Positions 1,596 through 49,511 of a stretch of DNA of 64,000 bases are shown here, piece after piece. Source of the DNA: Octopus sinensis (taxonomy: Eukaryota); NCBI RefSeq assembly GCF_006345805.1, contig NC_043005.1, forward strand, positions 15,252,001 to 15,316,000, given 5' to 3'. The first letter of the stretch is position 1, and each line of letters begins with the position of its first letter. The notes below the pieces were generated by a model. That model made no database searches. It was not told the DNA's origin and was given only the letters and a program-made list of their open reading frames with translations. The translations under genes and the position numbers were made by a program.

Positions 1596-1629
<34 letters not shown>

Positions 1630-3611: not shown

Positions 3612-3767
3612 GTGGCTGTGTGGTAAGTAGCTTGCTAACCAACCACATGGTTCCGGGTTCAGTCCCACTGCGTGGCATCTTGGGCAAGTGTCTTCTGCTA
3701 TAGCCCCGGGTCGACCAATGCCTTGTGAGTGGATTTGGTAGATGGAAACTGAAAGAAGCCTGTCGTA

Positions 3768-3814
<47 letters not shown>

Positions 3815-4400: not shown

Positions 4401-4547
4401 CTTACAGTGCTGAGTTCAATTTTTCTTATGAGAGAAGTTACCTGTGGTTAACAGGCATCGTATCCAGGAGGATGTTTTTTGCTTTCACCAACTAAAAAAC
4501 CAAATGAACAGTGATCCAATGGCTCATAGAGGAACATATAGTATTAA

Positions 4548-4752
4548 TCCTTTAGCATTTAAACTGGCCATATCTAGCCAAAATATTCTGTTTTATCTTC
4601 AAACCAGCTAGATCTGGCCTCTCACACCTACACTACAATGTCTTTTAAAAGTAATCTTTAAAATCTCAGAGCTATGAGATAAGTGTGACCAATTCAAAAC
4701 TTTGTAAATAAATAAGCGGTACATCTGACGGAGTAATTTGAAAGCTGAGAGG
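4548..4752. mobile_element. piggyBac-type MITE family 2 (diverged)
   Basis: TTAA-TCCTTTAGCATTTAAACTGGCC ... GAGAGG-TTAA. Confidence 0.7.
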
Positions 4753-6238
4753 TTAAAGCATTCAGCATCCTATCCCTGATAGCAGGGAACTTTAGTTAAA
4801 ATTTGCTCTTTTTTTTCCAAAGTTGTGGTCTGAGAAGGGTTGTAAAATGGTTGACAGTGCTGAAGAGGTTAGCATCTCATCCCTGGTAATGGAAAATTTT
4901 GGTTAAGATTTGTTCTTTCTCATCCAAAACAATATAGATTTTGCATAATACAAAATAGATTTTGAAAAAAGCAGAAGTTTAAAAAAATGTTTTAGTAAAT
5001 GGTCATGTTACTATTCAGATCTATCTTCAAAAGAGTTCCAGCTGTAATAATTCAAACATTCCCACCCCTTTTTTTTTATATATATCAGGTGCTATAATGT
5101 CCAATATGCCCCTTTTTTTAAGACAACAGGGTGTGATTTGGTAACTATTTCTACCAGTGTGAGCAACCACATAGAAGCTCCTTTGTTGCTTGTTTAATTG
5201 GTTGTTAATTACTAAATTGCACAAACAGCAAATATTATAAGATTGTAACTAGTGTTATTGATATGTATGTGAATGGATGGGACGGATTATTTATTCAGAT
5301 CTCAGGGCCACTGTTGCTGGCGGCAGCGGCTTAGATTTGGCACTGTTAGTTCTGCTTACTTTCTTTCTTATGTTGCTATCCTGAATCAGTCCAAGAGAAT
5401 TCTGCAGTTTTCGCAGAATCAGCTGAGCAGCGTGGGAATGTTTGAAACGGTTGGACTCCATAAATACATGTGGACTTGATATGCAAGCACATGGTGGCCT
5501 CCTAGTTAAAGAATCTAGAAATGGCACGCGGGGGGATTGATGGGAGATGGCGCGGAAGATGGGGGAAGAGGAAGGGAGTGGCTGAGGGGGTGGAAGAGTG
5601 AAGAAAGAGGTGAAGGTATAAGATGAAGAAAAAGGAAGAGAGGGAAAGGAGGAACAAGGAAGAAAGAAAAGAAAGCTTCTTGAGATGAGGGTGTGAGGTG
5701 AGGTGAGGATGTTACATAATAGCAAAAAGAGAATTGAGATTGGTGAGAAACTGTGTGTGTTGGGGGTAGTGTGGAGAGAGGTGTATATGTTGTAATAGTG
5801 GGGGTGTGGAGGGGATAATATGACAGAGAGAGAGAGAGAGATAAGGGCGGGAAAAAACAAATGTAAAAATGAAAATAAGGCACGATCTTTAGTCTTCTTA
5901 TTGCTGTTAAGTAAATATGTAATGTTATGTGTGTATCTATGTATATAAATGTGTGTGTGTGTATATTTGTATGTATATGTGTGTGTGTATGCAAGCATGT
6001 AAAAGGATGATGATAATACATTTGTGTTTACATATACACTTTGTTTTTATTTTGTATAATACACATTTTTGATGTGTGTATATATTATGTTTATATGCAA
6101 AATATGTATATCTCTGTAGCGTATATATGTGTAGTGTATGTTGGTTTTTAGCCACAGGTCAGTCATAAGCATTCTGTCTTTTTTGTGAGATTTCTAGAAT
6201 TGCACCATCTAACGTGTCCTCTTTTTATTAAAAAAATG

Positions 6239-6397
6239 GGAGTGGCTGTGTGGTAAGTAGCTTGCTAACCAACCACATGGTTCCGGGTTCAGTCCCACTG
6301 CATGGCATCTTGGGCAAATGTCTTCTGCTATAGCCCCGGGCCGACCAAAGCCTTGTGAGTGGATTTGGTAGACGGAAACTGAAAGAAGCCTGTCGTA

Positions 6398-6438
<41 letters not shown>

Positions 6439-6651
6439 TTGTGTGTCTGTGTTTGTTCCCCTAGCATTGCTTGACAACCGATGCTGGTGTGTTTACGTCC
6501 CCGTCACTTAGCGGTTTGGCAAAAGAGACCGATAGAATAAGTACTGGGCTTACAAAGAATAAGTCCCGGGGTCGACTTGCTCGACTAAAGGCGGTGCTCC
6601 AGCATGGCCGCAGTCAAATGACTGAAACAAGTAAAAGAGAGTAAAGAGAGT
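6239..6651 (+). mobile_element. SINE family A
   Basis: Full-length, collinear with 3612-4041. Confidence 0.9.
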
Positions 6652-8230: not shown

Positions 8231-8721
8231 GTCTATATTGAAAGAGATAGAGAAAAAAGACCACGTCGCTAGGTTGCTGCATGGTTAGATTGAACCTAGA
8301 CTCACTTGGGTGCGAAGTAAACCTCTTACCTGTGGAGCTATGTTTATGCCCATCCTTAAATTTTAATGAATGCAAATATTTTTATATGGAGTGTCAGCAT
8401 TGCCTTGATATAATGTCAGCATATATGAGAATCAAGACAAGACTTTACAAAGAAAATATGTTCTATTTTGAAATTGCACTTTATGACCAGCCATTCTGAA
8501 AGGTAACTCAAGTAAAATTTGGCAAAACTCTAATTCTTTCATTGTTCTTGCTCTTTATTGAGATTGAAGTGTAAGGTGTATTTACTCAGTTGAGATTTAA
8601 GTGCAAGTATAATTATGACATTGCATTACCACAACATGCCAAATTAGACAGATATAAAGCTTGTATATTCATATATATTTGTATGTACAAATGCTTGCGT
8701 GCATGTGTGTGTATGTGTATT

Positions 8722-8735
8722 ATATATATACATAC

Positions 8736-8803
<68 letters not shown>

Positions 8804-8826
8804 ATGTATTTATATATATATATATG

Positions 8827-8863
<37 letters not shown>

Positions 8864-9030
8864 ATATTATATGTATTTATATATATATATATACATATAT
8901 ATATATGTATTTATATATATATATATACATATATATATATGTATTTATATATATATATATACATATATATATGTATTTATATATATATATACATATATAT
9001 ATATGTATTTATATATATATATATATTATT

Positions 9031-9063
<33 letters not shown>

Positions 9064-9271
9064 GTATTTATATATATACATATATATATTTATATGTGTG
9101 TATATATATATATATATGTATGTATTTATATGTATATACATATATATATATATATATGTATGTATTTATATGTATACATATATATATATATATGTATGTA
9201 TTTATATGTATATACATATATATATATATGTATGTATTTATATATATATACATATATATATATATATGTAT

Positions 9272-9362
<91 letters not shown>

Positions 9363-9435
9363 ATGTATTTATATATATATACATATATATATATATATTT
9401 TTTATTTATATTTATGTGTATATATATATATATAT
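8722..9435. repeat. Compound (TA)n/(TATG)/(TATT) microsatellite block
   Basis: About 700 bp of near-pure alternating purine-pyrimidine; source of the IYIY ORFs. Confidence 0.97.
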
Positions 9436-9769
9436 TGTATACACCACTACACCCTACACCACCATACCACACAAGACATCACACCACATCACCCCACCAT
9501 GCACACACTAGCACTGACCACTTCCCAGCCCCACACCTTCACACCTACACTTATACAAACGCACACGCCAAGGTCACCAGCCTCTTCCACACACACACAG
9601 ACATACTCTCTTATACACAGGCATGCACACCTTTGTTTTGGGATCACCTCTACTTTATTATCTTCCCTTCTCCCTAGCTCCTCTGTGTGACTCTTTTGTC
9701 CAGCATTCGCCACGTTGGATCGCTAGCCACTATCATTCTTTATTTTCTCTCCTTGTTTCTTTCTGTGTT

Positions 9770-13490: not shown

Positions 13491-13946
13491 ATTATCATTA
13501 TCATCATCATCATCATCATCATCATCATTATTATTACAATAATTATTATTATTATTGTCCAACCCATGCTAGCATGGAAAACGGATGTTAAATGATGATG
13601 ATGATGATGATGATTATTATTATTATCATTCGCTATATGGAAACAGACTCAGTATTCTGAATTATTAGAACATGTGCATAAATGTATGTATAGTATACAT
13701 ATATGTGTCTGTATATATATATATTTAATGTATATATATATATATGTATGTGTTCGTGTGTGTGTGTGCTGTATATAATTAGAAATTTGACGACTGAATG
13801 TCTTCTCAATTATTAACAAACTGCCCTTAGTTAAGGAAATATGTAATTATTCCATTTGAGATTCTTAACAGTAATCTCACCAAAATATGTTCTTTCTTGC
13901 TTTATTTATTATATTCAATTGTTTGTTTCTATTTATCCCTGTCTAG

Positions 13947-14094
13947 GTGGTTTTGTCATGTTGATGATGATACATATGTGAATGTACCAAAGCTGGTTAC
14001 TCTCCTTCAAAAATATAACCATACTCAAGACTGGTATCTTGGAAAACTTAGCCTTAAGCATCCGTTGCAAATTATGGACATAAACCGACCAGGA
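13947..14094 (+). CDS. fng: Fringe-family glycosyltransferase, first recognised coding exon (DxD motif)
   Basis: tctag|G TGG...GGA|gtaagt; encodes [49 protein letters not shown], matching the Fringe [12 protein letters not shown] motif. Confidence 0.95.
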
Positions 14095-14147
14095 GTAAGT
14101 TCACTAGTTTCCTTTCATACATATATGTTTAAAAGTATCGTGTTTAC

Positions 14148-14775
14148 TTACTCTCTTTCACTCTTACTCTTTTACTTGTTTCAGTCATTTGACTGTGGCC
14201 ATGCTGGAGCACCGCCTTTAGTCGAGCAATTCGACCCCAGGACTTATTCTTTGTAAGCCTAGGACTTATTCTATCGGTCTCTTTTGCCGAACCGCTAAGT
14301 CACGGGGACATAAACACACCAGCATCGGTTGTCAAGCAATGTTGGGGGGACAAACACACACACACACACACACACACATACATATATAATTGGTGGACCT
14401 GCGCAGTTGTCGAATGGTACTCGCGTGAGCGGAAACGACCACCCGGAAGACCTCCACGACGGTGGAGTTACGATTTCAGATGGTTGATTGGGATCACGTG
14501 GATGAGAAAGGCGCGATCCAGAGAGGAGTGGACAGCGTGCTGTGACCATCGGTGTCAAATGGATGCCTGATGGACTGGTCGGTCAAGGTGATCAAGGTGA
14601 TATATATATATATATATATGATGGGCTTCTTTCAGTTTCCGTCTACCAAATCCACTCACAAGGCTTTGGTCGGCCCGAGGCGATAGTAGAAGACACTTGC
14701 TCAAGGTGCCACGCAGTGGGACTGAACCCGGAACCATGTGGTTCATTAGCAAGCTACTTACCACACAGCCACTCC
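14148..14775 (-). mobile_element. SINE family A, interrupted by RTE fragment
   Basis: Reverse-complement halves flank 14391-14600. Confidence 0.85.
14391..14600 (+). mobile_element. RTE-clade LINE 3' end nested in a SINE
   Basis: WWTCAVVEWYSRERKRPPGRPPRRWSYDFRWLIGITWMRKARSREEW...* resembles the RTE C-terminal W..R.RGRP..RW motif; tail (TCAAGGTGA)2; GC-rich. Confidence 0.75.
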
Positions 14776-15640
14776 TACGCCTACTTGGGCATAAATTGCA
14801 CTGTATTATACTTGATTTTAACTGATAAATCTGGGGTGCAATCTATACATGGGGCAAAGCTAAGACTGTGAAGGAGAAAAAATTTGTGCTCTGACTTCAC
14901 ACTAAACTATACCAAACCAATGTACAGTGTTATATAGTCACTTAGTGATTCTTCTGCTGCTACTTTAGTATGAATGGAAAAATCTGCACTGAGCTGATGA
15001 GGGCGTAATAAAACCAAAACATGTCTAAATTTGTTTCTTATACTTACTGAAATAATTACAACAATATTTGACTCTGAATAATATTTATCCTTACTGTATA
15101 ATTATTTTAATGTTTGTTCCATTAAATATTGAAACGAACTTAAGTATTGTTATATGTAGATGGCATCCCATGGAAATTAAGCTCACATTTATTCTTAAAA
15201 TATGCTCATTTTTCATGCTTACCTGTGTACTTAGTTGCACATCTATTTACTGATTCTCTCATCACCACTTCAGCATGTATGCTGAAGCCTATGTTTCACT
15301 GATGAGGTCTAGTAAGGCTAAAACATGTCAAGTTGTCTCCCATACTTGTTGATATAAATGATATAGGTAAAATAATATTATACATTGATTAATGTAGTTT
15401 CTTCTTTATTTAATTCTAGTCTTTTTTTTTTAATGTTCCATGCAACATTTATTGTAATCTTCACTTAACTATCTGTCTATCTTTCCTCAGCATATATTTT
15501 AGTTAAATGTTTAATGTTCTATACAGTAGATATGTTAACAATAACTTAACTATCACTTTATATGTCAATATGTCTATTTTCCTTCACCATATGTGTATAT
15601 ATATATGTGTGTGTGTTTATATGTATATATATATATATAT

Positions 15641-19443: not shown

Positions 19444-19529
19444 AAGAAAATTGAATTTTGGTTTGCAACTGGTGGTGCTGGATTCTGCATCAGCCGAAGT
19501 CTTGCTTTGAAAATGATGCCCCATGCTGG
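19444..19529 (+). CDS. fng: Fringe coding exon
   Basis: ttgcag|AAG...GG|gtaagt; [28 protein letters not shown], the Fringe [13 protein letters not shown] motif; phase 0 in, phase 2 out. Confidence 0.95.
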
Positions 19530-22423
19530 GTAAGTCTGTTCTCTTTGTTGTAATTATAACTTATATTATGATGAGTATTCAGCCATCCTAGCTCCACTGT
19601 CACTGCTGTTGCCATCGTCATCATCATCATCATCATCACCACCACCACCACCACCACCACCATCACCGTCATCATCATCATTGTTGTCGTCATCATCATT
19701 GTTGTCATTATCATCACCATCATCATCATCACCTGCATCATTAACAACAAAAGCCACAGTAATAACATTGTCAGTATTACCACCTGCAGCAACAACGACA
19801 ATGACACCCCCCACCCCACCACCACCTCCACCACCACCACAACAACAAGCCAACAAAGAACCCGTATATAGTTGCTCAATGTTAAAAATAGCAGCCAAAT
19901 TCCCACAAGTTACATCATATCTTCTTTAAATAAAGAAAGGGCACATTTGATAATGTAGTCTTAGGTATACAAAAAGATTGAGGAGTCACAGCTGGAATAC
20001 CTTTGATGAATCAAGGTTAAACTGTTACAAAACAACATCATTGCCACACCATCACCACCACCAACAACAACAACAATAGCTAAAGGAAAGGCTTCATTAG
20101 ACACTGTATTTTTACATCCTTTGAAAAGATGGAATGGTCATAACTGGAATGCCTGATCAGAGTTCTACATCATCAGAAGAGAGAAACACAACACAATGAA
20201 TAAGTGAGATGCTGTAAAGTCACTCAACCAGCCAAGTCTCCCCTCAAATCACATTTGATTATTTCAAAATAAGAAGGATACAAAGTATAATATAGTCTTG
20301 AATTGGATGGTCAAGGTTGGAATATCTTAGACCATATAAGGGGGTACTGAAAAGTTCCTGGTTTTAAGAGTATTGTGAAAGGCCTGGCTGGAGGTCCAAC
20401 CTTCTGAGTTCTTTTACAGGGCTTAGAAAAACTGAAGGACTGTTGCAGTAAGTGTATGAATCTGAGAGAGGAATATGTTTAATAAAATCATAATTAACTG
20501 ATACTCCTTTATTTTCTTTTACTCAAAGCCAGGAAGTTTTCAGCACCCTCTTAGAGGTCTAATGTATAACTGCTAAATATTTACAAGAGAATCATTATCA
20601 GCAGCACTCAAACATTTCTAGTTCCTTATGTATAAGCATGACTTAAGGAAATGCTACTGTATTTGAAATGTGTGTCATAGGACTAAAACTTCAAAGCATT
20701 TATCAATGTTAGTTGCTATTTCTAGCAGGTCATGTGGTTGTGGAATTGATGGTGTTGTTTAACTGGTGAAGTTCTACAGGTTAATTTTAAGACTTCTGGT
20801 GTCTTCAGGCTGAATATTCTTTTTAAGATGAAGATGACCATCAATTACAGCCACAACAACAGCTGGACATATCAGTAATGTTGCTGTAGTGGGTGGGAAT
20901 CTGTATTGAACAGAATGGTAAAATCAGGTTATTTCCAAATGATGAATGCTGGCACAAAACTTCAATGATGCAATGTTGGTAGTAACACTTGTTTCTTTTT
21001 CTCTCTCTATCACTTTCTATTTGGTTCAATTCCTAATGATTCTGTCTTCCGCTGTCTTTGAAAAAATAAAAATACTAAATAAAGCAGGTTATGTTAATTA
21101 TAGCACTTGTATAATGTTAATTAGACATTTAACTTTGATCTACTTGCCAATTTATTCATTAATGATGCTTAATTGTCTGGTGATTATTCCACTTTGTATA
21201 CTACAAGTTTCTACCAACTGTTTTTTGCTTTTTGTTGGTGTTTTATTAAAATATTTTCTATTTCTGAGATATAACCATTTTAAGTGTATTTCTATCAATT
21301 TTTACTTTACTGTTGCTCTGGATATTTGTTCTTTATAAGTGGCTGAAAGGTAAAAGTACCATAGTTATTAGCTTTGGGAAAAATACATAGCTACTGTAGT
21401 TAGTGAGTTTGCTTCATAATCACGTGTTTTGGGTTCAATTCTACAACATGGCACCTTGAGCAAATGTGTTCTACATTAGTCTCAGGTCATTCCAAGCCTT
21501 ATGAATGAAAATGGATCAGCAGTAATTTATGTGTGAGTGTATATGTGTGTGTGTATGTGTGTTGATATACATTTGTTGACTCAGGGCAGTAGAAGCCTAC
21601 TAGAGGGATTATTCCCCTCTTGGGAGATAGACTTAATTTGTCCCTCTGTTTAATACCATCACCAGGCCTTGGATATTTGCTAGATATACTGTTTTAGAAG
21701 TTCCTATGTGATGCTGTGGTCCCTATTTACAGCCAGATGGACTGAGTAAGCCAGGTTTTAACCATCTTGGCCACAGACATAGCACACCACTGGTAGCATG
21801 ATGTCCAGTCAGCTGCACATGTATAATATACATACACCCGTGTGTGTGCATGTGTGTGTGTGAATTTCTGTCTAGCAAATCCATTGACAAAATTTTGGCC
21901 AGCCCAGGACTGTAGCAGAAGAAGCTTACCCTAGGTGCTGTGCAATTGGACTGAACTGAACCTGAATCCATGTGGTTGGGAAGCAAACTGCTTAACCACA
22001 CAGCCAGACTTGAACATTAAATGTATGTGTGTGTATGTGTATGTGTTTGCATATGGATATATATTTGCATGTGTTTAGTATATATATATATATATGTATA
22101 TAATCAAAATCTACATCTTTGTCTGTATATCTACCTTCTCTATAATGTTGCCACTTGATTTGAAAACTTTTGTATTAATGGAAAACCTCTACAATTGGCT
22201 GATGAGCACTCAGCATCTTAAATCTGTTGTAATACTTACAACATTTAATAAAATGATGTAGTGCGAAACAATTGTACCAAATTACCGGAGTCATTCTTGT
22301 TGCTTATTTTGATTATAATCACCCCACAAATTTTTATGGATAACACCATACAAAATTCTGGTGCATCTAAATTAAGTACCATATTCTTTCGAATCTAAAT
22401 TTTTGCTGAACTTATATATGTAT

Positions 22424-22727: not shown

Positions 22728-23465
22728 ATATATGTATATATATATGTGTATTGCTCAAAGTAAGTTGGCTGGGGTAGCCAAGTTAACTCCACAGCTGCAG
22801 GCATATTGTTGACTGATAATGGACAGGCTGTCTTAAAAACAACTGTTTGAAGTATATGTCTAAATTGACAAGACCATGCAAGCATCAGTAAATGTTATGT
22901 AAACATTTAGAAAAGAGAAAGAAATTTGGGTAGGTTGTCAGGTAGGGTATCAGGTAGCTTGCTTGACAGAATGTGTGAACTAAACCAAAGTTTGATGTCT
23001 TTCCAATTTCATTTATTTGACAGGTTAGTTTAGTTCTTTCATTGGTTTATAAAAAAAATTTGTTTTTGTTTTTGTTTCTGTTTCTTTTTTTCATCCATTT
23101 AGTATCTCTTCTGGCTAAGATTTACCTGGTGCAGGTGTCTTTTAATTGATGCCCATACATTGTTTTGTGTAGTTTTTCTTTCTTTTATTTATTTTTGGTA
23201 TGTCTTTGAAGGCATTTAAATATTTATACACCACACACGCACACACACACGCATGCACACACACACACACATGCACTGTGTGTGCATGCATGTATGTATA
23301 TAGATGTGTGTGTGTGTGTATATATATATATATGTGTATGTATGTTGTGTGTTGTTTATGTGTGCAGGGTATATCATCAACATCAACATCATCATCTTCA
23401 CTTTACACCCAATTTCCATGGAATGAGTTGTCATGATTTGAGTAAAATCTCATTTGGGATTACCA

Positions 23466-23780
23466 GTGGCTCTGTGGTAAGTAGCTTGCTTACCAACCAC
23501 ATGGTTCCGGGTTCAGTCCCACTGCGTGGCATCTTGGGCAAGTGTCTTCTATATAGCCTCGGGCCGACCAGAGCCTTGTGAGTGGATTTGGTAGACGGAA
23601 ACTGAAAGAAGCCCATCGTATATATACATATGTGTGTGTGTGTGTGTTTGTGTGTCTGTATTTTTGCTCCCAACATCACTTGACAACCGATGCTGATGTG
23701 TGTACATCTCCGTAACTTAGCAGTTCGGCAAAAGAGACTGATAGAATAAGTTCTAGGCTTACAAAGAATAAGTAAAGAGA
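23466..23780 (+). mobile_element. SINE family A, 3'-truncated
   Basis: Head and centre match; ends after ACAAAGAATAAGT. Confidence 0.85.
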
Positions 23781-24065
23781 ATATGTATGGTGAACATTTT
23801 AGGTGCATGAGGTAAGCACCAGACACTGACCTAAGTTGATAGAAACTTTCTGTAAAACGATATTTTTCATGCTGTACCCTCTGTAAAGATAACAAAAATA
23901 ATCTTGATCTAACTCACTGGTCCTGTGGGACGGAGTGTGCAATCAAGCCTTTAAATGGAAGTGTGCGAAGTATGAGACCCTTTGCAGAATTGCAGGGAGA
24001 AGGGATGCAAGCTATTTCAAACTAATATGCTTCTTCTTCTCATTTACCTGGAACATATAATTGTT

Positions 24066-24073
24066 ATACATAC

Positions 24074-24145
<72 letters not shown>

Positions 24146-24264
24146 GTATATATATATGTATATATATATACGTATATATATATACATATATGTTATATAT
24201 ATATGTATATATATACAATATGTATATGTATATACATATATGTATATGTATATATATATGTATA

Positions 24265-24299
<35 letters not shown>

Positions 24300-24558
24300 G
24301 TATATATATACATATATGTATATGTATATATATATGTATATATATATACGTATATATATATACATATATGTATATATATATATGTATATATATATACATA
24401 TATGTATATGTATATACATATATGTATATGTATATATATATGTATATGTATATATATATGTATATATATATGTATATATATATGTATATGTATATATATA
24501 TGTATATGTATATATATATGTATATATATATATATATATATATGTATATACATATATG

Positions 24559-24589
<31 letters not shown>

Positions 24590-24704
24590 GTATATGTATA
24601 TACATATATGTATATGTATATATATATGTATATGTATATATATATGTATATATATATATATGTATATATATATGTATATATATATGTATATGTATATATA
24701 TATG

Positions 24705-24783
<79 letters not shown>

Positions 24784-24798
24784 GTGTATGTGTATATA
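24066..24798. repeat. Compound (TA)n/(TATATG)n microsatellite block
   Basis: About 730 bp; source of the IYIY ORFs. Confidence 0.97.
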
Positions 24799-24898
24799 AA
24801 TTAGAGATAAAACCACTATTATGCAACTCAAACAGTGATAGACATAAACCAAAACATGAATAACAAATAAAATATATTTTTATAAAACATATAACTAG

Positions 24899-29350: not shown

Positions 29351-29421
29351 TGGAGGTCGCTTAATGGCTGTTGGAGAAGAAATACGCCTGCCAGACGACT
29401 GTACAGTTGGATATATCATAG
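29351..29421 (+). CDS. fng: Fringe coding exon (catalytic PDDCT motif)
   Basis: ttttag|T GGA...ATA G|gtaagt; (G)GGRLMAVGEEIRLPDDCTVGYII; phases match neighbouring exons. Confidence 0.95.
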
Positions 29422-30604
29422 GTAAGTCAGTATCTATATATATTGATCCTAGTTACATAAATACGTCTTTGTCATAGGTAAGCTAATATCTATAAACCAT
29501 AGAGGAGTGAAAGGAGCTGAGAGGACAGAAAAATCAAATTACTTATATAATGGAAGGCAAGGTTTACGATATTGGGAGAATATTGCCTTTTCCCATTATA
29601 TTTTGTTCTTCGTGTAGTTCAAGTTCCAGCAGGCGAAGAAAGAAGTCTTTAAGTGCAAATGTAATTTACAACTGGTTTATTTACAAGTTTCACAGAACAG
29701 GTGAAGTGCATTGCTCTCAGCGACCATCTCGAGCTGCGTGCATGTTGTTGTATCTCCATTAGTATGGGGCACATTGCCTCTGGAGGTACAACATGCAGAC
29801 AGGCCCAGCCAGTGAAGTGTGCTCAGCAAGCGCTGCTGCATAGAAGCAGAGAGAAAGAGTGAATCTGTTTCTGTTTTGCCCTTATATACAGTTTGCCATC
29901 GCGAGCCTCGTTGTGATCTCGTGCATGGCAAATGGAATGCAGGTGAGGTCTTGCTCCAGTCTCGGAGATGGATTTTGCTTTGTATGTTTTATTAGTGAGG
30001 CAGAAAGATGGGGCAGAGCCCATGAATGATCTCTATGAGTCCTCTGTGACTTGAAAGATTGGTGTGTTTAGTTTGAATATTTCTAACTCAATGTCTGTCT
30101 AAAAGAAATTTGAACATTTCAGAGGATTTGATATTCTGGGAAGGAAAGAATGCATATAATTAATATAAGGACATGGAGGGAAAACAGTGCTGTAGAGAGT
30201 GATGAGAATGCAGATGGGAAAGCAGAGGTGGAGGTGGCATGCAACTAGGTAATTCCTAGAAGCAGAGGCCATTGTAGTATTGGTATAATTAGACAGGTTG
30301 GAGAAACAACATATTTATAGAGCTCAGCAGGATTTGAACTCAGAGCATAGAGGGTCGAAACTAAATACCAAACATTTTATCTGATGCTCTGATGATTCTG
30401 CTAATCTGCTGCCATTCAACTTTCATCCAATTATCTATGGCAAATTTAGTACAGCATTAGACTAAACAGGTAGCCTTAATGCTGTAGTATTTACTTTTGT
30501 TACACTAAATCCTGAGTTCAAATTCTTACTTTACCTTTCATCTCTTTAGGCAAAATAGGGGTTCTGTAAATAAAATACAGTCTTTAAAAATAGACCCATG
30601 TTAA

Positions 30605-30824
30605 CCCTTTAGCATTTAAACCAGCCATATCTGGCCAAAATATTCTACCTGTTCTAAGTTAAACTGACCAGATCCAAGCTTTCACACCTACCTGCTTACC
30701 TACCCTACAATGTCATTCTTTCACATCATTGTAATATTGAAGTTATGGGATCATATCTGATAAAGTCAAAACAATGTGAAGAAATAAGCAATACATTTAA
30801 CAAAGAAATCTGAACGTTAAATGG
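30605..30824. mobile_element. piggyBac-type MITE family 2 (diverged)
   Basis: TTAA-CCCTTTAGCATTTAAACC..., right end degenerate, then TTAA. Confidence 0.75.
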
Positions 30825-30947
30825 TTAAACTAAACATAGACGCACATAGAGATATACGCATGCGCAAATGAAGACACAGACAATAGAAATACAAAATGGC
30901 TGACTGTTAGTAAGGAGAGACACACAAATAAGAAAGAAGAAAGCAAA

Positions 30948-30992
30948 GGACCACTGATGAGGTCACAGGAGTGTGACGAAAGAACTCTGGCC
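30948..30992 (+). ncRNA. Minimal type-I hammerhead with canonical core
   Basis: GG(A)CCA CTGATGA G GTCAC AGGAGT GTGAC GAAA GAAC TC TGGCC; triplet CUC, cut after 30987. Confidence 0.7.
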
Positions 30993-31146
30993 GAAATAAG
31001 ATTAAGTTTAATGTAAAAAATAAATAACACTGAAGCAAAGTAACACCAAATATATAGTGCGTGTGTTTTTATTGGCTAAACTGGCAAAATGACCATTCCG
31101 AAATACAACAATAAATGGTTAAATATTTTTCCTATTTCTTCTTCAG

Positions 31147-31241
31147 GACATCTTTTGAAGAAACCACTCACAGAAGTGGAAGACTTCCATTCACACCTCG
31201 AGGCACTTTGGTTACTGCGACCTAACCAACTGGAAAAACAT
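31147..31241 (+). CDS. fng: Fringe coding exon (FHSHLE motif)
   Basis: cttcag|GA CAT...CAT|gtaagt; (G)HLLKKPLTEVEDFHSHLEALWLLRPNQLEKH. Confidence 0.95.
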
Positions 31242-31460
31242 GTAAGTCGACTTATATTCCTGCTGTTTGTGTTCTTGCTGTGTTACTGCTGCGACTATGT
31301 GGCTGTTACTACAGTGACTGACTGTGTTACTACTGTGACTACGAAACCGTCTGTGTGTTAATGCTGTCAACATGCATGTTGTAAACTCTGACTTTGTTTA
31401 TTACATTTAGTTACATAAGTGCTCTGTGTTCAAACCAAGTGGGTTTTTTTTACATTGTAG

Positions 31461-31543
31461 GTAACATTCAGTTATTCCTACTATGGAGAGAAAATGAATA
31501 TTGTTAATGTTCCAGGATTTTCAGAAGATGAAGACCCTACAAG
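31461..31543 (+). CDS. fng: Fringe coding exon
   Basis: ttgtag|GTA...ACA AG|gtaaag; VTFSYSYYGEKMNIVNVPGFSEDEDPT, like Fringe VTLSY...FSxxEDPSR. Confidence 0.93.
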
Positions 31544-31663
31544 GTAAAGAACCCTTAATTTGTCTATTGTATCCAGTGATATTATATATTTATACATGTA
31601 TGCGTTCAGAGTAGCATGGAAGAATAATTGTACAATGAACATTCATGTGCAGCATCCTAACCA

Positions 31664-31760
31664 CTATGTCATATGCCCATGGGCATATGGCATAGTAGTT
31701 AAGGGCGTAGGCTACTAACACCCAGATTCTGAGTTCGATTCCAAGCAGTGACCTGAACAG

Positions 31761-31793
<33 letters not shown>

Positions 31794-31935
31794 CATCAAA
31801 AAATACCTTAGGAATGAGAACCCAGGTTCAAAATTTCCCCAAGACATCTGAAGAAGGCTGGAGGATATATCAGCCGAAATGTTGTGTTAACAACAAACAA
31901 GATGAGGACAAATATCTGTCGAATGTAAATAATAT
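31664..31935 (+). mobile_element. Second copy of the tRNA-head/hammerhead-tail SINE
   Basis: Collinear with 1493-1785; 17-bp fold-back of the head at the 5' end. Confidence 0.78.
31843..31888 (+). ncRNA. Minimal hammerhead in SINE tail
   Basis: GACAT CTGAAGA A GGCTG..CAGCC GAAA TG TT GTGTT; zero-loop stem III, so it would need to dimerise. Confidence 0.55.
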
Positions 31936-32790
31936 TCATGTGCATATTGTAATAACAGATCATGTATGTATATGTGTGTGTGTGTGTGTTGGTGGTTGTT
32001 TAATTCCTTTTGTTATTTCCATATGTACTAGTCTTTTTATTCCCTATCTAATGGAAATATTTGCTACAGATCAATGTGTCCAACTCCCTGGCTACTTATG
32101 TGAAACTACAGTCTAACAATTACTACAAACAATATAAATAATATGCACTCCTCATGATTGTGTATTGAGTACTCTAGTGTTTTACACAGACAAAAATGGC
32201 ATTTAACTATGCTCTTTAACATATATATGTATACATATATATGTGTGTTTGTGTTTAGGGTTTATTGCTATCACATCTATTCCCATGCTTATGTTAGTTT
32301 ATTTCTTAGCACACTTGTTTAGCTTCAGGTCAGCTCTAATCTAGCAGGCCATTCATGTAAGGCATTCTAGATGTGACCTTCTCATCTTTTGGAAGAAGGA
32401 GTGTCTAGGATTGCATTACCTAATGTGTCTTTTTTTTTTATATAGTTTTAAAGTAAGGTGTATAATTCAATGGTAATTTGGCTCCTACTTTCAACAGCAA
32501 CAACATAGAATCTCAAGTTAGATCAGTTGTAATCAGTTGGATGCTCTTCCCACTGTGAACCATTCAACTATACTCTTACTCTCTTTTACTTGTTTCAGTC
32601 ATTTGACTGCGGCCATGCTGGAGCACCGCCTTTAGTCAAGCAAATCGACCCCGGGACTTATTCTTTGTAAGCCCACTACTTATTCTATCGGGTCTCTTTT
32701 GCCGAACTGCTAAGTTACGAGGATGCAAACACACCAGCATCGGTTGTCAAGCGATGTTGGGGGACAAACACAGACACACAACCCCCCCCC

Positions 32791-32825
<35 letters not shown>

Positions 32826-32828
<3 letters not shown>

Positions 32829-34513
32829 TTGTGTTGGAAATTAATTAGCACTTCTCAAATTTCTACATTTTCTTACATTTTCTTAATTTAATTAACTTAT
32901 TATCAGAAACAAACTCGTTTATAATCAAAAATTTATTAAAACATATCCCAGCACACCACATAATTGTTATTAATCGTGAAATTTAGTCAATATCTTGTTG
33001 CTCCTCCTTTGGCAGCAATGACAGCTGCTACACGGGTCGGCATGCTGTCTATGAGTGCCTGCAAGTACTGTGCAGGGATGGCCCTCCATGCAGCAAGAAG
33101 TGCCCCAAACAGCTTGTGTCGGTTCCTGTATTGCTGCACATTCAAATCCCTACCCAATCGACTCCAGAGGTTCTCAATAGGGTTCAGGTCAGGTGACTGG
33201 CCAGGCCAGTCCATGACTGTCACCCCATGGTCCTTGAAGAAACCGGTTGTGAGCTTGGCTGTGTGGGAAGGCACGTTGTCCTGCTGGAGCACATACTCCT
33301 CGCCACCAAAGAGGTATCCCGTACTATCTCAACGTACTTTGCTGCGTTGATGTTGCCTTCGACGGCATAGAGCCGCCCAACACCACTGTAGCTGAACGCC
33401 CCTCACACCATCAGACCACCCCCACCATGCTTCACCAAGCGCTCACCCCTGCGGCGTCGCACATGGACAGGCTTGTCACTGACGAGACTGAATCGCGACT
33501 CGTCAGTGAACATCACTGTCCACCACTGCTGCACGGTCCATGTCTTGTGGGCACGAGCCCAGAGCAGCCGCCTCTTCCAATTTTTGGCTGTAAGGAGCGG
33601 CTTATGGGCGGCCCTACAGGATTTTAGACCAGCTTCCAGTAATCTGGTCTTGACGGTGGTTGTAGACAACTGCTTCCCTGTCATCTTTTGCATCTCCTCC
33701 GCCAGTTGCTGGCTCGTTGCCCTTCGGTTGTACAGCGACTTTCGGATCAGCATCCGGTCCTCCCGCTGGGTCGTCAGCCTCTTCCGTCCCCTACCCTTTT
33801 TGTCAGCTGCTGATCCGGTTTCCTCGTACTTCTTAAATAAGCACTGAATTGTGCGCCTGGCTACACCAAGTTTTCTGGCTATTGCAGCCTCCGACAGCTT
33901 CCCATGCCACGAGAGAGCCTCGTACCGTCTCTCCAAGGTCATGCGAGGTCTTGGGCCCATCTAGGAATGAACGATAAAAACCAGTTATTTTCATTAAAAC
34001 TATTCATTTGAATAATGTTATGCTATAACAAAACTGCTATGAGTTATTATTCATTAAACAAAAAAGAAAGAAAGCAGAATTTCTCACCTTATTTGATGTA
34101 TAACAGAAAGTTTTGTGAACCAGAAGTGACGTCATCAAGCAGAGTGTAGGAGAATTTGTGAGGAAAAAAAATCTTGCAAATACACAAATCAATTAACCTA
34201 CGAGCTGTTCAAAACGTCTTACGCGATGAGAAAACTTAGTACGGTGTGATTTTCGGTCCTTGCGAGGCGCTACCTATATCTATTAAACAAAGGAAGATTT
34301 GTCTGCATCCGCACTCCAAGTTGTTGTTGCACTGCTATGTCAACATCATTAGGCTGTAGACTCTCAAACTGCTCTGCAAACAAAGTTACGTCATCGTTCT
34401 GCGCAACAGTGAACTCAGAACAAAGCAATAGTTCGAGATATGGCCACTAGGTGACAGCAAATACCTTGAGTGAAGAGAAAATCAAGGGTGCTAATTAATT
34501 TCTGACGGTAGTG
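32826..34513 (-). mobile_element. Tc1-family DNA transposon (1688 bp), non-autonomous copy in a fringe intron
   Basis: TA on both sides; imperfect TIRs CACT-tgtgttg-GAAATTAATTAGCAC and CACT-accgtca-GAAATTAATTAGCAC; internal transposase. Confidence 0.92.
32987..33960 (-). pseudogene. Disrupted DD34E Tc1 transposase
   Basis: HTH N-terminus, GRGRKR linker, FTDESRF, QQDN...34 aa...NPIE(N); TGA replacing W in VKHGGGGLMV*GAF at 33403-33405; short deletion after GERL; frameshift just before LFGGEEYVLQQDN. Confidence 0.9.
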
Positions 34514-34520
34514 TATATAT

Positions 34521-34570
<50 letters not shown>

Positions 34571-35124
34571 CATATATACAACAGGCTTCTTTTAGTTTCC
34601 GTCTACCAAATCCACTCACAAGGCATTGGTCGGCCCGGGGCTATAGCAGAAGACACTTGCCCAAAATGCCACGCAGTGGGACTGAACCTGGAACCATGTG
34701 GTTGGTTAGCAAGCTACTTACCACACAGCCACTCCTGCTCTATGAAGCAGAGGATACAGTTTTTACCCATTCACCTTCTCCCACCAGAAAAATACTAAAA
34801 ATAAATTTGTATACATATATTCTTGTGTTGCTATTATTAAAGGTTGATGAGTGGCAACAATGGTAGAGCACCACCATACTAAAACAAAATACCTTTATAT
34901 AGTTACTTACATTCTGAATTCCAATCTCACTAAGATCAATTTTTTTAATTTTTCATCCTTTTGGAGTTGATAAAATAAAGTACCAGTTATATTCTGGAGC
35001 TAGTTGAATCAAATAAGCTGTTTTTACCAAATATATGTAAACTTGTGCTGACTTTAGAAATTTCATTTTTAAATTATTTTTTGTTTTTACATCTTTATAT
35101 TTTTATTGGTTTTTCTTTTTCCAG

Positions 35125-45532: not shown

Positions 45533-46526
45533 CTTGCCAGTTATGAGATTTTAACGAAGGATTGTTACAACAAGGCAGACAAACGAAACTTATCGGTAAT
45601 ATTGGAATGTTTTGGAAGAACTAATAATTCTTTTACAAAAGAATACCTTCTACCCTCAAAATTGCTTGCTTTGTGCCAAAATTAGAAAGAATTATTATTA
45701 TTATTATTATTAAAGAGGTGAGCTGGCAGAATCTTTAGCACGCTGGATGAAATGCTTAACAATGGTATTTCACCTGTTGCTATGTTCTGAGTTCAAATTC
45801 TGCTGAAGTCGACTTTGCCTTTCATCCCTTCAGGGGTTGATAAAATAAGTACCAGTTATGCACTGAGGTCGATGAAATCGACTAACCCCCTCCGCCAAAT
45901 TTCAGGCCTAGAAAGGATTATAATTATTGTTATTATTATTATTGGTGGTGGTGGTGGAGTGGCAGAATTGATAGAGCATTGGAGAAATTGCCTTGCTATC
46001 TTTGTTCTGTTTCTTTACGTTCTGAGTTCAAATCCTGGTGAAGTCAACTTTGCCTTTCACTCTTCTGGAGTTGATAAAATATAGTACCAGTCAAGTACTG
46101 GGAATGATTTAATCAATTACCCCTCCCCTCAAAATTGCTGGCCTTGTTCCTAAGTTAGAAACATTTTTTTTTTTTTTTTTTTAAATTTTTTCCACAATGT
46201 TCTTCCCATTCATTTTACATAATGAAATCCTAATTCAGCTCCAAACTAAAGCAAGAAGGGATTTCATTCAAAATTCCCCCCCTTTTTTTTTTGTTAAGAA
46301 AGATATTTGAACCATTATTGATCTCAGCTACTGTTCTCAACTACATATGTAAATGTTGCTTTTTCTTATCACTCCTTTTTGAATGTATATATCTTCTGTA
46401 CTAAATTGTTAATTATATATTTTACCAAAAAAATGTAAATAAAATTTGAAAAAAAATAATTAACTATATCAAAAAGAAAAATGTGTTGGCTTTTGTCATT
46501 TTGGCAATTTTAATTTTCAGCTCTCT

Positions 46527-46878
46527 TTTACTTGTTTGTCATTTGACTGAGTCCATGCTGGAACACCGCCTTTAGTCTAGCAAATCGACCCCAAGACTTA
46601 TTCTTTGTAAGCCATTGGTCTCTTTGTCGAACCGCTAAGTTACGGGGATGCAAACACGCCAGCATCGGTGATGTTGGGGGGACAAACACACACACTCACA
46701 TACATTTATATATATATTTATATACATACATACATACGACGGGCTTCTTTCAGTTTCCATCTACCAAATCCACTCACAAGGCTTTGATTGGCTCGAGGCT
46801 ATAGTAGAAGATACTTGCCCAAGGTGCCACGCAATGGGACTGAACCCAGAACCATGTAGTTCGCAAGCAAGCTACTTA
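46527..46878 (-). mobile_element. SINE family A
   Basis: Reverse-complement copy. Confidence 0.85.
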
Positions 46879-47635
46879 CCACACAGCCACTCCTACACCT
46901 TATATTCATACTTACTTTAAAATTATATAAGGAGTATCTTTCAAACACCATTTTAAATAACGACCACGTTATCTTACTAAATTCTTTATTTTCAAAATTA
47001 ACTGATGCAGTTCCCTACTCTCAAGATGAGGCTCTTATCATTAGGGCAGTAGTGATTTGGTTGAACCTGTTGTACATGAGATAAAATGCCTTGCTGGTGT
47101 TTAGTTATGCCCCAAGTTCCTCTCTCATATAAGTCAACATCCTTCCAATTTTGATAACATTATTACCAACTGAATTAACTCTTTGCTGTGTACAAATTTG
47201 TATCATTGTGTCTATATCTATCAGTAAATTCGCTCAGCAGAATCTTTAGCATGCTGAGCAAAATGCCTTCAGGTTACTTCATGGTTACTTTACATTCTGA
47301 ATTTAAATGTTATTTTGCCTTTCATCCTAACTGGACTGATAAAATAATTGGTTATCTCTACACAAAATTTCTGGCCATGTTCTGAATAAGAAATTGTTTT
47401 ATAGGAAATTAAATAACAGCATAAAACAAATTTAATCCAAGTATGACCATTTATTTCTTTACTGTTTGTTGAGGCTAAATTCATGGTGTAACTGTCCACA
47501 AAGGAGTTAATTCTGCACAGCCTCTTGTCAACTTGTGTAACATTTTGGAGAATTGACTTGTTGCTTCTTTGTGGTGCTTGTTTTCAGATAAATCAACCAA
47601 TTGTGTCGCAGTTCTTCAACAGAATTGCACTGTTG

Positions 47636-48287: not shown

Positions 48288-48677
48288 GCAGGAGTGACTG
48301 TGTGGTAAGTAGCTTGTTTACCGACCACATGGTTCCGGGTTCAGTCCCACTGCGTGGCATTTTGGGCAAGTGTCTTCTATAGCCTCGGGCCGACCAATGC
48401 CTTGTGAGTGGATTTGGTACACGGAAACTGAAAGCCCGTCGTATATATATGTATATATATATATATATGCATGTGTGTTTGTGTGTCTGTCACCCCTAGC
48501 ATTGCTTGACAACCAATGCTGGTGTGTTTATGTCCCCGTTACTTAGCGGTTCGGCAAAAGAGACCGATAGAATAAGTACTGGGCTTACAAAAGAATAAGT
48601 CCCGGAGTCGAGTTGCTCGATTAAAGGCGGTGCTCCAGCATGGCTGCAGTCAAATGACTGAAACAAGTAAAAGAGTA
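48288..48677 (+). mobile_element. SINE family A
   Basis: Full-length copy directly upstream of the CR1 fragment. Confidence 0.88.
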
Positions 48678-48824: not shown

Positions 48825-49511
48825 TCACTCCTGGACAAAACACATCGCTAAAATTGTCAAGAAGGCTGAGGGTGTCTTGGCATCACTCACCAAATCCTTT
48901 GTGAGCCGCTCTCCGGCTATCTATCTGCGGCTGTATATAGCTATGGTAAGACCTCACCTGGAGTTTGCATCGCCGGTCTGGAACCCCTATCTTGCCCAGG
49001 ATATCAATCGTCTGGAAGCTGTTCAGCGACGTGCAACCAAAAGAATACCCTCCATCAGGCATTTGCCATATCCTGAACGCCTTACCTCCCTGGGCATGGA
49101 CACATTGAAACTCCGACGTCTGGCAGCTGACTTGGCAGACACCCATAAAATTATCAACCATCGCACAAACAATAACTCTGAGCACCTCTTCAAACTCCAC
49201 CCATCTAACACCCGTGGACATATTTACAAAGTAAGAAAACAGCACAGCTCCCATGACTTTCAGAAACATTTCTTCACGCTGAGAGTTGCTGAAGCATGGA
49301 ACAAACTGCCGACATCGGTTGTTAGTCGTCGGAGCACTGCTTCCTTCAAGACTTCCATGCTTCCTGAGATTCGCCAACACTACACTTGATTTTTTCCCCT
49401 CCATACACCCAGACATTTCTACACTACTGCATGTACTTTATATGCACTTTCTGACAAGTTGTGGTACACCTGAGCACTGTATACAATAATTTCATTATTA
49501 TTATTATTATT
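48825..49511 (+). mobile_element. 5'-truncated CR1-clade LINE 3' end
   Basis: RT C-terminus LYIAMVRPHLEFASPVWNPY...LEAVQRRATK...LRRLAADL...RGH...[14 protein letters not shown]; 3' UTR ending in (TTA)n. Confidence 0.9.

What the first reader, a model, noticed from the sequence alone, without database searches (positions are those of the whole stretch)
30948..30992. Canonical-core hammerhead 160 nt upstream of a fringe splice acceptor
Seen: intact CUGAUGA and GAAA, a perfect 5-bp stem II, stem I with one bulge and a CUC triplet, in sense orientation; stem III is minimal (AG-AA-CU). Known: intronic hammerheads have been domesticated in amniotes (HH9, HH10). Inference: a candidate for co-transcriptional cleavage that affects splicing or levels of a Notch-modifying gene.
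Basis: partly seen in the sequence, partly recalled or inferred. Interest (0 to 1): 0.8.

Follow-up and report, generated by a model that had tools for sequence, protein, structure and literature searches.

The report
Transposon-borne minimal hammerhead in octopus fringe intron
The hammerhead-ribozyme motif is real, but it arrived inside a 282-base mobile-element insertion that a sister octopus species lacks, and it has no workable third helix, so it is most likely an ordinary retroelement relic rather than a regulator of the fringe gene.

Summary
The motif is at 30948-30992 (+) as described, 159 nt upstream of a fringe exon. Two corrections apply. Helix II is 6 bp, not 5. One unpaired G sits between A9 and G10.1.

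It is not a chance match. A strict descriptor gave 0 hits in 1 Gb of random sequence. It gave 0 hits for 539 permuted-core decoys on 258 kb of real octopus DNA. The true core hit twice in this window.

Its architecture is that of the minimal hammerheads of Penelope-like retroelements (PLEs):
- an extra nucleotide after A9;
- a G10.1-C11.1 pair;
- a long helix II and a short helix I;
- a vestigial helix III.

The window is most likely Octopus sinensis. In O. bimaculoides the orthologous intron lacks window 30830-31111. That 282-bp segment is flanked by a perfect 12-bp target-site duplication, so the motif came with a lineage-specific insertion.

Helix III cannot close as a monomer, because 2 bp would enclose a 2-nt loop. 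Its sequence, AGAACU, is not palindromic, and the predicted dimer duplex is +0.7 kcal/mol. Palindromic variants give about -6 kcal/mol.

Verdict: a retroelement-borne, probably crippled minimal hammerhead. A domesticated HH9/HH10-like regulator of fringe is not supported. Cleavage itself could not be tested here.

The parts
30948..30953 (+). Helix I, 5' strand (GGACCA; A30950 is bulged)
   Evidence: Pairs with 30988-30992 in the minimum-free-energy and centroid folds, alone and within the 282-nt element.
30954..30960 (+). Core box C3-A9 (CUGAUGA). It contains an AUG at 30957-30959.
   Evidence: The AUG opens only a 19-codon frame (hand translation of the sequence read).
30961..30961 (+). Unpaired G between A9 and G10.1, a hallmark of PLE-type minimal hammerheads
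   Evidence: The hallmark is described in PMC4209133.
30962..30977 (+). Helix II: 6 Watson-Crick pairs GUCACA/UGUGAC (G10.1-C11.1 closes it) and a GGAG loop
30978..30981 (+). Core G12 A13 A14 plus A15.1 (GAAA)
30981..30986 (+). Vestigial helix III, AGAACU: A15.1-U16.1 and G15.2-C16.2 around a 2-nt AA loop. It is not palindromic.
   Evidence: Not formed in any predicted fold. The homodimer duplex is +0.7 kcal/mol, against -6.4 and -6.2 for the palindromic variants AGAUCU and AGUACU.
30987..30987 (+). C17. The predicted scissile bond lies between 30987 and 30988.
   Evidence: Position relative to the core.
30988..30992 (+). Helix I, 3' strand (UGGCC)
30830..31111 (+). 282-bp inserted element that carries the hammerhead. 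It is A-rich on the + strand (45% A) and 36% G+C. It has no detectable protein domain and no other copy in the 129 kb of octopus DNA held.
   Evidence: Absent from O. bimaculoides L001, where its two flanks abut. No Pfam hit in six frames of the intron.
30818..30829 (.). Left copy of the 12-bp target-site duplication TAAATGGTTAAA. It overlaps the 3' end of an older MITE.
   Evidence: O. bimaculoides has a single copy of this site.
31112..31123 (.). Right copy of the 12-bp target-site duplication TAAATGGTTAAA, 23 nt upstream of the exon D acceptor
29351..29421 (+). Fringe exon C (..GGRLMAVGEEIRLPDDCTVGYII.)
31147..31241 (+). Fringe exon D (HLLKKPLTEVEDFHSHLEALWLLRPNQLEKH). The hammerhead lies in the intron before it (29422-31146).

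Best explanation
The motif is a genuine hammerhead of the minimal type that Penelope-like retroelements (PLEs) and their non-autonomous derivatives carry. It reached this fringe intron as part of a 282-bp retroelement fragment, window 30830-31111. The fragment inserted with a 12-bp target-site duplication after this Octopus lineage (most likely O. sinensis) split from O. bimaculoides.

Shown:
- the sequence and its local fold;
- the non-random nature of the motif;
- the presence/absence difference between species, and the target-site duplication.

Inferred:
- The carrier is a 5'-truncated PLE copy or a PLE-dependent element.
- As in other minimal hammerheads, the ribozyme served the element's own RNA, in tandem or dimeric arrangements or with the element's protein.
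- This solitary copy has no closable helix III and a non-palindromic helix III strand, so it cleaves very poorly or not at all.
- It has no selected role in fringe expression. It is a tolerated intronic passenger.
For: (1) The core and helices are present as described.

(2) The motif is not chance.
- 0 hits in 1 Gb of random sequence.
- 0 hits for 539 permuted-core decoys on real octopus DNA, against 2 hits for the true core.

- an unpaired nucleotide between A9 and 10.1;
- a G10.1-C11.1 pair;
- a 6-bp helix II;
- a 5-bp helix I without a defined loop 1.
That paper also states that most such motifs occur singly, probably in truncated PLEs.

(4) Orthologous comparison.
- Window 29973-30829 aligns to L001 39349-40194, and window 31112-31600 aligns to L001 40183-40687.
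- The 282 bp between them are missing in O. bimaculoides.
- Perfect 12-bp direct repeats flank the segment in the window.
- L001 has no N in this region.

(5) PLEs are one of six TE orders in O. vulgaris. Thirty-one families are classed as recently active. The split from O. bimaculoides is dated at 13-33 My (PMC13282606).

(6) The layout resembles the Anolis Poseidon PLE (PMC11167929).
- There, the ORF AUG lies at the hammerhead and the cut site is 26 nt after it.
- Reverse transcription starts 111-118 nt into the ORF, with an optional 30-40-nt tail.
- Targets are AT-rich.
- Here, the AUG of CUGAUGA is at 30957, the cut site is 31 nt on, the element ends 155 nt after the AUG, and the target is AT-rich.

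(7) Predicted incompetence.
- Helix III is absent from every predicted fold.
- The dimer helix III duplex is +0.7 kcal/mol.
- Single minimal hammerheads showed no detectable cleavage in vitro, and dimers only low activity.
Against: - No reverse-transcriptase or GIY-YIG remnant lies next to the motif. No Pfam domain was found in six frames of the intron.
- No second copy of the 282-bp element exists in the 129 kb of octopus DNA available. Membership of a repeat family, and of a PLE family in particular, is therefore unproven.
- The helix III loop is not palindromic, which departs from the PLE consensus.
- No Rfam hammerhead model matches.
- The resemblance in layout to the Anolis PLE could be coincidence.
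- PLE hammerheads can be protein-assisted, so activity in vivo is not excluded.
Confidence: 0.7

Rival explanations
1. The carrier is a retroelement with a hammerhead, but not a truncated PLE. It could be a SINE-like retroposon or a monomer of a metazoan non-LTR retrozyme. Everything else, including the absence of a host function, is as in the best explanation.
For: - A second element of the same length, 860 nt downstream (31652-31933), combines a tRNA-like head with a tail that holds a minimal hammerhead motif. Hammerhead-bearing SINE-like elements therefore exist in this genome.
- SINE-like hammerhead elements are known in Schistosoma (PMC6765202).
- At 282 bp and 36% G+C, the element falls within the range reported for retrozymes (PMC7229834).
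Against: - Element 1 has no tRNA-like A or B box, and Rfam found no small-RNA head in it.
- It is not in tandem, and it does not fold into an unusually stable RNA (z = +0.66).
- It shows no similarity to element 2.
- Retrozymes carry canonical type I hammerheads with loop-loop contacts, not this minimal type.
Confidence: 0.18
2. A chance match: an unrelated inserted sequence happens to contain CUGAUGA, GAAA and two short stems.
For: - A loose descriptor is expected to hit about 500 times by chance in a 2.7-Gb genome.
- No Rfam hammerhead hit.
- The local fold is not more stable than shuffled sequences (z = -1.2).
- Helix III is missing, and no sister copies were seen.
Against: - With the family hallmarks included, there were 0 hits in 1 Gb of random sequence.
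- There were 0 hits for 539 decoy cores on real octopus DNA, against 2 for the true core.
- The motif sits inside a mobile-element insertion, where such hammerheads are expected.
Confidence: 0.06
3. One reading: a functional intronic ribozyme. It would cleave the fringe pre-mRNA co-transcriptionally and so tune splicing or mRNA level.
For: - The catalytic core is intact, on the sense strand, 159 nt upstream of the acceptor.
- Domesticated intronic hammerheads exist in amniotes (PMC6155905).
- PLE hammerheads can be helped by protein.
Against: - The motif is absent from the O. bimaculoides orthologue, whose fringe protein is 98% identical over the aligned part.
- No helix III forms as a monomer or as a dimer.
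- The other hammerhead motif in the same transcript does not have a complementary helix III strand (AUGU against AGAACU; sequences, compared by hand).
- No loop 1 / loop 2 architecture.
- Single minimal hammerheads are inactive in vitro.
Confidence: 0.04
4. The 282 bp are ancestral and were deleted in O. bimaculoides by recombination between the 12-bp repeats, so the motif could be old.
For: Only two lineages could be compared. A deletion between direct repeats would leave the same pattern.
Against: - The repeat duplicates the terminal bases of a MITE whose inverted-repeat end (GCTAAAGGGTTAA) is intact and single in O. bimaculoides.
- Both repeat copies are perfect.
- A second insertion with the same signature lies 540 bp away.
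Confidence: 0.02

Closest known systems
Minimal hammerheads (min-HHRs) of Penelope-like elements (Cervera & de la Pena 2014, PMC4209133)
   Same: - Type I topology with an intact core.
- An unpaired nucleotide between A9 and 10.1.
- A G10.1-C11.1 pair.
- A long helix II (6 bp).
- A short helix I (5 bp) with no defined loop 1.
- A helix III reduced to 15.1-16.1 and 15.2-16.2, with a 2-nt insert like the D. virilis variant.
- It occurs as a single motif in a short insertion, like most genomic copies.
   Different: - The helix III insert (AA) is not palindromic, so the dimeric helix III that these ribozymes rely on is not predicted to form.
- No PLE ORF or pseudo-LTR could be linked to it with the data at hand.
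SINE-like hammerhead retroposons of Schistosoma (Sm-alpha / Sj-alpha)
   Same: A short non-coding retroposon that carries a type I hammerhead and is dispersed in the genome. The neighbouring element at 31652-31933 even has a tRNA-like head.
   Different: - Sm-alpha hammerheads are canonical, with loop-loop contacts, and cleave in vitro.
- Element 1 has no polymerase III boxes and only a minimal hammerhead.
Domesticated intronic hammerheads of amniotes (HH9 in RECK, HH10; Rfam RF02275 and RF02277)
   Same: A type I hammerhead in sense orientation inside an intron of a protein-coding gene, thought to derive from retroelement hammerheads.
   Different: - Those are conserved across birds and mammals, or across amniotes, and have stable helices and tertiary contacts.
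- This one is absent from a congeneric species, lacks helix III, and matches neither Rfam model.
Dimer-dependent hammerheads of newt satellite 2 and avocado sunblotch viroid (Forster et al. 1988, as cited)
   Same: Helix III is too weak for monomeric cleavage.
   Different: Those have self-complementary helix III/loop sequences and occur in tandem multimeric transcripts. Here the strand is not self-complementary and the copy is solitary.

Membership tests
Hammerhead ribozyme (general definition) | Conserved core: C3 U4 G5 A6 N7 G8 A9, then G12 A13 A14 | tested here: met
   CUGAUGA at 30954-30960 and GAA at 30978-30980.
Hammerhead ribozyme (general definition) | An A15.1-U16.1 pair followed by H17 (not G) at the cleavage site | tested here: inconclusive
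   The letters are present (A30981, U30986, C30987). The pair would have to close a helix with a 2-nt loop, and no predicted fold forms it.
Hammerhead ribozyme (general definition) | Three helices around the core | tested here: not met
   Helix I (5 bp with a bulge) and helix II (6 bp) form. Helix III does not form as a monomer, and the homodimer duplex is +0.7 kcal/mol.
Hammerhead ribozyme (general definition) | Site-specific self-cleavage that leaves 2',3'-cyclic phosphate and 5'-OH ends | not testable with these tools
   Needs in vitro transcription or end-specific RNA sequencing.
Rfam hammerhead families (Hammerhead_1, _3, _II, HH9, HH10) | A covariance-model match at the family's gathering score | tested here: not met
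   No match in the window at gathering scores. No hammerhead family was listed even at E <= 10 on 30800-31150.
PLE-type minimal hammerhead | An unpaired nucleotide between A9 and 10.1, with a G10.1-C11.1 pair | tested here: met
   G30961 is unpaired and G30962 pairs with C30977.
PLE-type minimal hammerhead | [quoted passage not shown] | tested here: met
   Helix II is 6 bp. Helix I is 5 bp, and the flanks do not extend it.
PLE-type minimal hammerhead | Positions 15.2-16.2, and loop 3 where present, are palindromic, so two copies can build a joint helix III | tested here: not met
   AGAACU is not self-complementary. The duplex is +0.7 kcal/mol, against -3.1 to -6.4 for palindromic forms.
PLE-type minimal hammerhead | Located in a PLE pseudo-LTR, or in a truncated PLE copy | tested here: inconclusive
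   It lies in a 282-bp insertion flanked by a target-site duplication. No PLE ORF remnant was found. No PLE consensus or genome was available for comparison.
Domesticated intronic hammerhead (HH9/HH10-like) | Conserved at the orthologous intron position across related species | tested here: not met
   Absent from the O. bimaculoides orthologue (L001 40183-40194), which is continuous sequence without N.
Domesticated intronic hammerhead (HH9/HH10-like) | A canonical type I fold with a stable helix III and loop 1 / loop 2 contacts | tested here: not met
   There is no closed loop 1 and no helix III.
Metazoan non-LTR retrozyme | Tandem repeats of about 170-400 bp, each with a canonical type I hammerhead | tested here: not met
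   A single copy with no tandem array. The hammerhead is of the minimal type.

The most novel reading that the evidence does not exclude
The most novel reading not excluded is that the young insertion gave this octopus lineage a weakly active hammerhead 159 nt upstream of fringe exon D. Activity would come from intermolecular pairing or from help by a PLE protein. Some pre-mRNA would then be cut before the intron is removed. Fringe output or exon usage would differ from O. bimaculoides, which lacks the insertion. That would be a species-specific, ribozyme-based change in a Notch-pathway modifier, caught at its origin.
Probability: 0.03. Interest if true: 0.6.

Novelty: new member of a known kind. 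Interest (0 to 1): 0.2.

Why it matters
If the main reading holds, this is one more dispersed copy of a class of retroelement hammerheads known since 2014, and it says nothing special about Notch signalling.

Two modest points of value remain:
- It documents PLE-type minimal hammerheads in an octopus genome, inside a dated, lineage-specific insertion.
- It shows how an intact core in a gene intron can be told apart from a domesticated ribozyme: compare the orthologous intron and check helix III.

The natural presence/absence contrast between Octopus species would make any effect on fringe splicing easy to test.

Tried and rejected
- **Rfam.** The whole window at gathering scores gave nothing. 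Two sub-regions at E <= 10 gave only noise, with no hammerhead and no tRNA.
- **ARAGORN.** No tRNA in the window.
- **Repeats.** A repeat search of the window was dominated by microsatellites. No family covers the motif.
- **Protein searches.**
  - A 134-aa query returned only proteins of 235 aa or less, and no cephalopod.
  - A 90-aa ORF spanning exon D found nothing.
  - A padded query finally retrieved the Octopus orthologues. It joined the first 95 residues of P0001 to the window's 191 residues, including one G too many from a splice-joining slip that was corrected later.
- **O. vulgaris and O. sinensis loci.** DNA could not be fetched because the gene ranges exceed 100 kb. Presence of the insertion in O. 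vulgaris is therefore unknown.
- **N-terminal fringe exons.** They are not in the window.
- **Pfam.** Six frames of the intron gave no domain.
- **Retrozyme-like circular RNA.** Rejected: the element's fold is no more stable than shuffles, and there is no tandem copy.
- **Relation between the two 282-bp insertions.** Rejected, including as circular permutations: the alignment score is within the shuffle range.
- **Joint helix III between the two hammerhead motifs.** Rejected by inspection: AGAACU against AUGU.
- **Papers.** The Lunse et al. 2017 and EMBO Rep 2010 papers are not held. PMC4209133 has no supplement held as text.

Full report
**The observation.** Window 30948-30992 (+) reads GGACCA-CUGAUGA-G-GUCACA-GGAG-UGUGAC-GAAA-G-AA-C-U-C-UGGCC.
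- The two core boxes are intact. C17 is at 30987, so the scissile bond would lie between 30987 and 30988.
- Helix I has 5 pairs with a bulged A.
- Helix II has 6 Watson-Crick pairs, not 5, closed by GGAG.
- One G (30961) is unpaired between A9 and G10.1.
- Helix III is only A15.1-U16.1 and G15.2-C16.2 around two A residues.
- ViennaRNA forms helices I and II, both in isolation and within the surrounding 282 nt. It never forms helix III.
- The local fold is not more stable than shuffles (z = -1.2).
- No Rfam family reaches its gathering score in the window. No hammerhead family appears even at E <= 10 in a 351-nt search.

**Chance.** A loose descriptor was run first. It required helix I of at least 5 bp with one bulge allowed, helix II of at least 5 bp with one extra nucleotide allowed, and any helix III of at least 2 bp.
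- It gave 19 hits per 200 Mb of first-order Markov sequence built from the window.
- That is about 0.012 per window but about 500 per 2.7-Gb genome.

A second descriptor added the published hallmarks of PLE-type minimal hammerheads. These are one nucleotide after A9, G10.1-C11.1, helix II of at least 6 bp, and a helix III span of 2, 4 or 6 nt.
- It gave 0 hits in 1 Gb of random sequence.
- On 258 kb of real octopus DNA (both strands of the window, L001 and L002), 539 decoys with permuted core letters gave 0 hits.
- The true core gave 2 hits, at 30954 and 31848.
- Relaxed versions gave 3 true hits, against a decoy mean of 0.02 and a maximum of 2.

The motif is therefore a real hammerhead-derived sequence.

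**Gene and species.** Fringe exons lie on the + strand:
- 13946-14095
- 19448-19530
- 29351-29421
- 31147-31241
- 31461-31543
- a last exon from about 35126

The upstream exons are outside the window. The 190 residues encoded here are 100% identical to O. sinensis XP_029640791.1, 99% to O. vulgaris CAI9728731.1 and 98% to O. bimaculoides XP_014773200.1. The window is therefore most likely O. sinensis or a very close relative. The motif lies in the intron 29422-31146, 159 nt upstream of exon D.

**Orthologous comparison.** The O. bimaculoides locus (L001, CM046610.1) aligns to the window at about 88-95% identity.
- Window 29973-30829 matches L001 39349-40194, and window 31112-31600 matches L001 40183-40687.
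- Window 30830-31111 (282 bp) has no counterpart.
- In the window that segment is flanked by two perfect copies of TAAATGGTTAAA, at 30818-30829 and 31112-31123. O. bimaculoides has one copy, in continuous sequence without N.
- The duplicated site includes the terminal bases of an older MITE with TTAA ends (30601-30829). That MITE is present in both species and has two more copies in the window.

This is the signature of an insertion in the window's lineage after the split from O. bimaculoides. That split is dated at 13-33 My for O. vulgaris against O. bimaculoides (PMC13282606). A deletion in O. bimaculoides is not strictly excluded but is unlikely.

**What the carrier is.** Negative findings on the 282 bp:
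- no protein domain was found in six frames of the intron;
- there is no tRNA-like head;
- there is no tandem copy;
- the RNA fold is not unusually stable (z = +0.66 and -0.38);
- there is no other copy in the 129 kb of octopus DNA I could obtain.

The hammerhead's architecture, however, matches the minimal hammerheads that Cervera and de la Pena described in the pseudo-LTRs of PLEs.
- Their helix III is reduced to a tiny palindromic unit.
- Most genomic copies occur singly and are 'probably related to truncated PLEs' (PMC4209133).
- PLEs are one of six TE orders in O. vulgaris, with recently active families.

The layout also resembles the Anolis Poseidon PLE studied in vitro (PMC11167929).
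- There, the ORF AUG lies at the hammerhead and the cut site is 26 nt after it.
- Reverse transcription begins 111-118 nt into the ORF, with an optional 30-40-nt tail, and targets are AT-rich.
- Here, the AUG within CUGAUGA is at 30957, the cut site is 31 nt on, the element ends 155 nt after the AUG, and the target is AT-rich.

I regard a 5'-truncated PLE copy, or a PLE-dependent non-autonomous element, as the most likely carrier. This step is inference, not demonstration.

**Competence.**
- A 2-bp helix closing a 2-nt loop cannot form.
- Minimal hammerheads get round this by pairing two copies through a palindromic helix III. Here the strand is AGAACU, and its self-duplex is predicted at +0.7 kcal/mol.
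- The palindromes AGAUCU and AGUACU give -6.4 and -6.2 kcal/mol. The 4-nt palindromes of typical min-HHRs give -3.1 to -3.9.
- The predicted homodimer uses other pairings, not a double hammerhead.
- The literature reports no detectable cleavage for single min-HHRs and only low activity for dimers, often at non-physiological Mg2+. One PLE hammerhead needed the element's protein.

I therefore expect this solitary copy to cleave very poorly or not at all. This was not, and could not be, tested here.

**A second motif.** The strict descriptor also hit 31848 (+): CAAGACAU-CUGAAGA-A-GGCUGG-AGGAUAUA-UCAGCC-GAAA-UG-U-U-GUGUU.
- It lies in another 282-bp insertion, 31652-31933, in the next intron.
- That insertion is flanked by a perfect 11-bp duplication, ATTCATGTGCA, and is also absent from O. 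bimaculoides.
- The element has a tRNA-like head with A- and B-box-like sequences, a (TAA)n stretch, and a tail that holds the motif. The head is my reading of the sequence; Rfam and ARAGORN do not call it.
- A diverged copy lies at 1491-1781, next to an inverted partial copy at 1399-1491. In those copies helix II is weakened.
- The two 282-bp elements are unrelated in sequence. Their helix III strands, compared by hand, are not complementary.

This neighbour shows that hammerhead-bearing retroposons were active in this lineage. That supports a transposon origin for the motif in question. It does not provide a partner for dimeric cleavage.

**Verdict.**
- The interpretation as a domesticated intronic ribozyme acting on a Notch modifier is not supported. 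The motif is young, transposon-borne, absent from a congener with a nearly identical fringe protein, and structurally incomplete.
- It is a new member of a known kind, the PLE-type minimal hammerhead.
- The remaining uncertainty lies in the identity of the carrier and in whether any residual cleavage occurs in vivo. Both can be settled by the steps listed under next steps.

Noticed in passing
window 31652-31933 (+). Motif at 31840-31888, core at 31848. Duplications at 31641-31651 and 31934-31944.: A second PLE-type minimal hammerhead motif (core CUGAAGA, unpaired A, 6-bp helix II, helix III AUGU). It sits in a second insertion of exactly 282 bp, with a perfect 11-bp target-site duplication, and is absent from O. 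bimaculoides. The element has a tRNA-like head, a (TAA)n stretch and a tail that holds the motif. It therefore looks like a SINE-like retroposon with a hammerhead, as in Schistosoma Sm-alpha. It is unrelated in sequence to the first insertion.
   Followed up: partly
window 1399-1781: A diverged copy (80% identity) of the element above lies at 1491-1781 (+). It is directly preceded by an inverted partial copy of its 3' part at 1399-1491 (-). Head-to-head arrangements like this are described for PLE insertions. The hammerhead-like helix II is weakened in both copies.
   Followed up: partly
window 30601-30829; copies at 59719-59945 and 4544-4757: A MITE of about 230 bp with TTAA ends and terminal inverted repeats (TTAACCCTTTAGC ... 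GCTAAAGGGTTAA). In O. bimaculoides its 3' end lies only about 27 nt upstream of the exon D acceptor. The 282-bp element inserted exactly at that end.
   Followed up: partly
window 32987-33960 (-): Remnants of a Tc1/mariner transposase gene in the fringe intron: HTH_Tnp_Tc3_2 at E = 4e-19 and DDE_3 at E = 2e-10, split over two ORFs.
   Followed up: yes
window 3612-4036, 6239-6639, 14165-14388, 14600-14783, 23465-23773, 32563-32828, 34523-34738, 46521-46894, 48288-48675 and others: Many copies, on both strands, of an abundant short interspersed repeat of about 200-400 bp. It is also present in the O. bimaculoides locus at L001 9111-9525. It was not classified.
   Followed up: no
window 48877-49389 (+): A 170-aa ORF whose sequence looks to me like the C-terminal part of a LINE reverse-transcriptase protein. 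Pfam gives no match, so this is unverified.
   Followed up: partly
window 8590-9690 and 23980-24860: Long compound (TA)n/(TATG)n/(CA)n microsatellite tracts. G+C drops to 0.23-0.26, and the tracts create long spurious ORFs and large inverted repeats.
   Followed up: no
window 14084-14086 (codon in fringe exon 13946-14095): The only fringe difference between the window (R, as in O. sinensis) and O. vulgaris or O. bimaculoides (Q) in the 190 residues compared is in ..MDIN[R/Q]PG...
   Followed up: no
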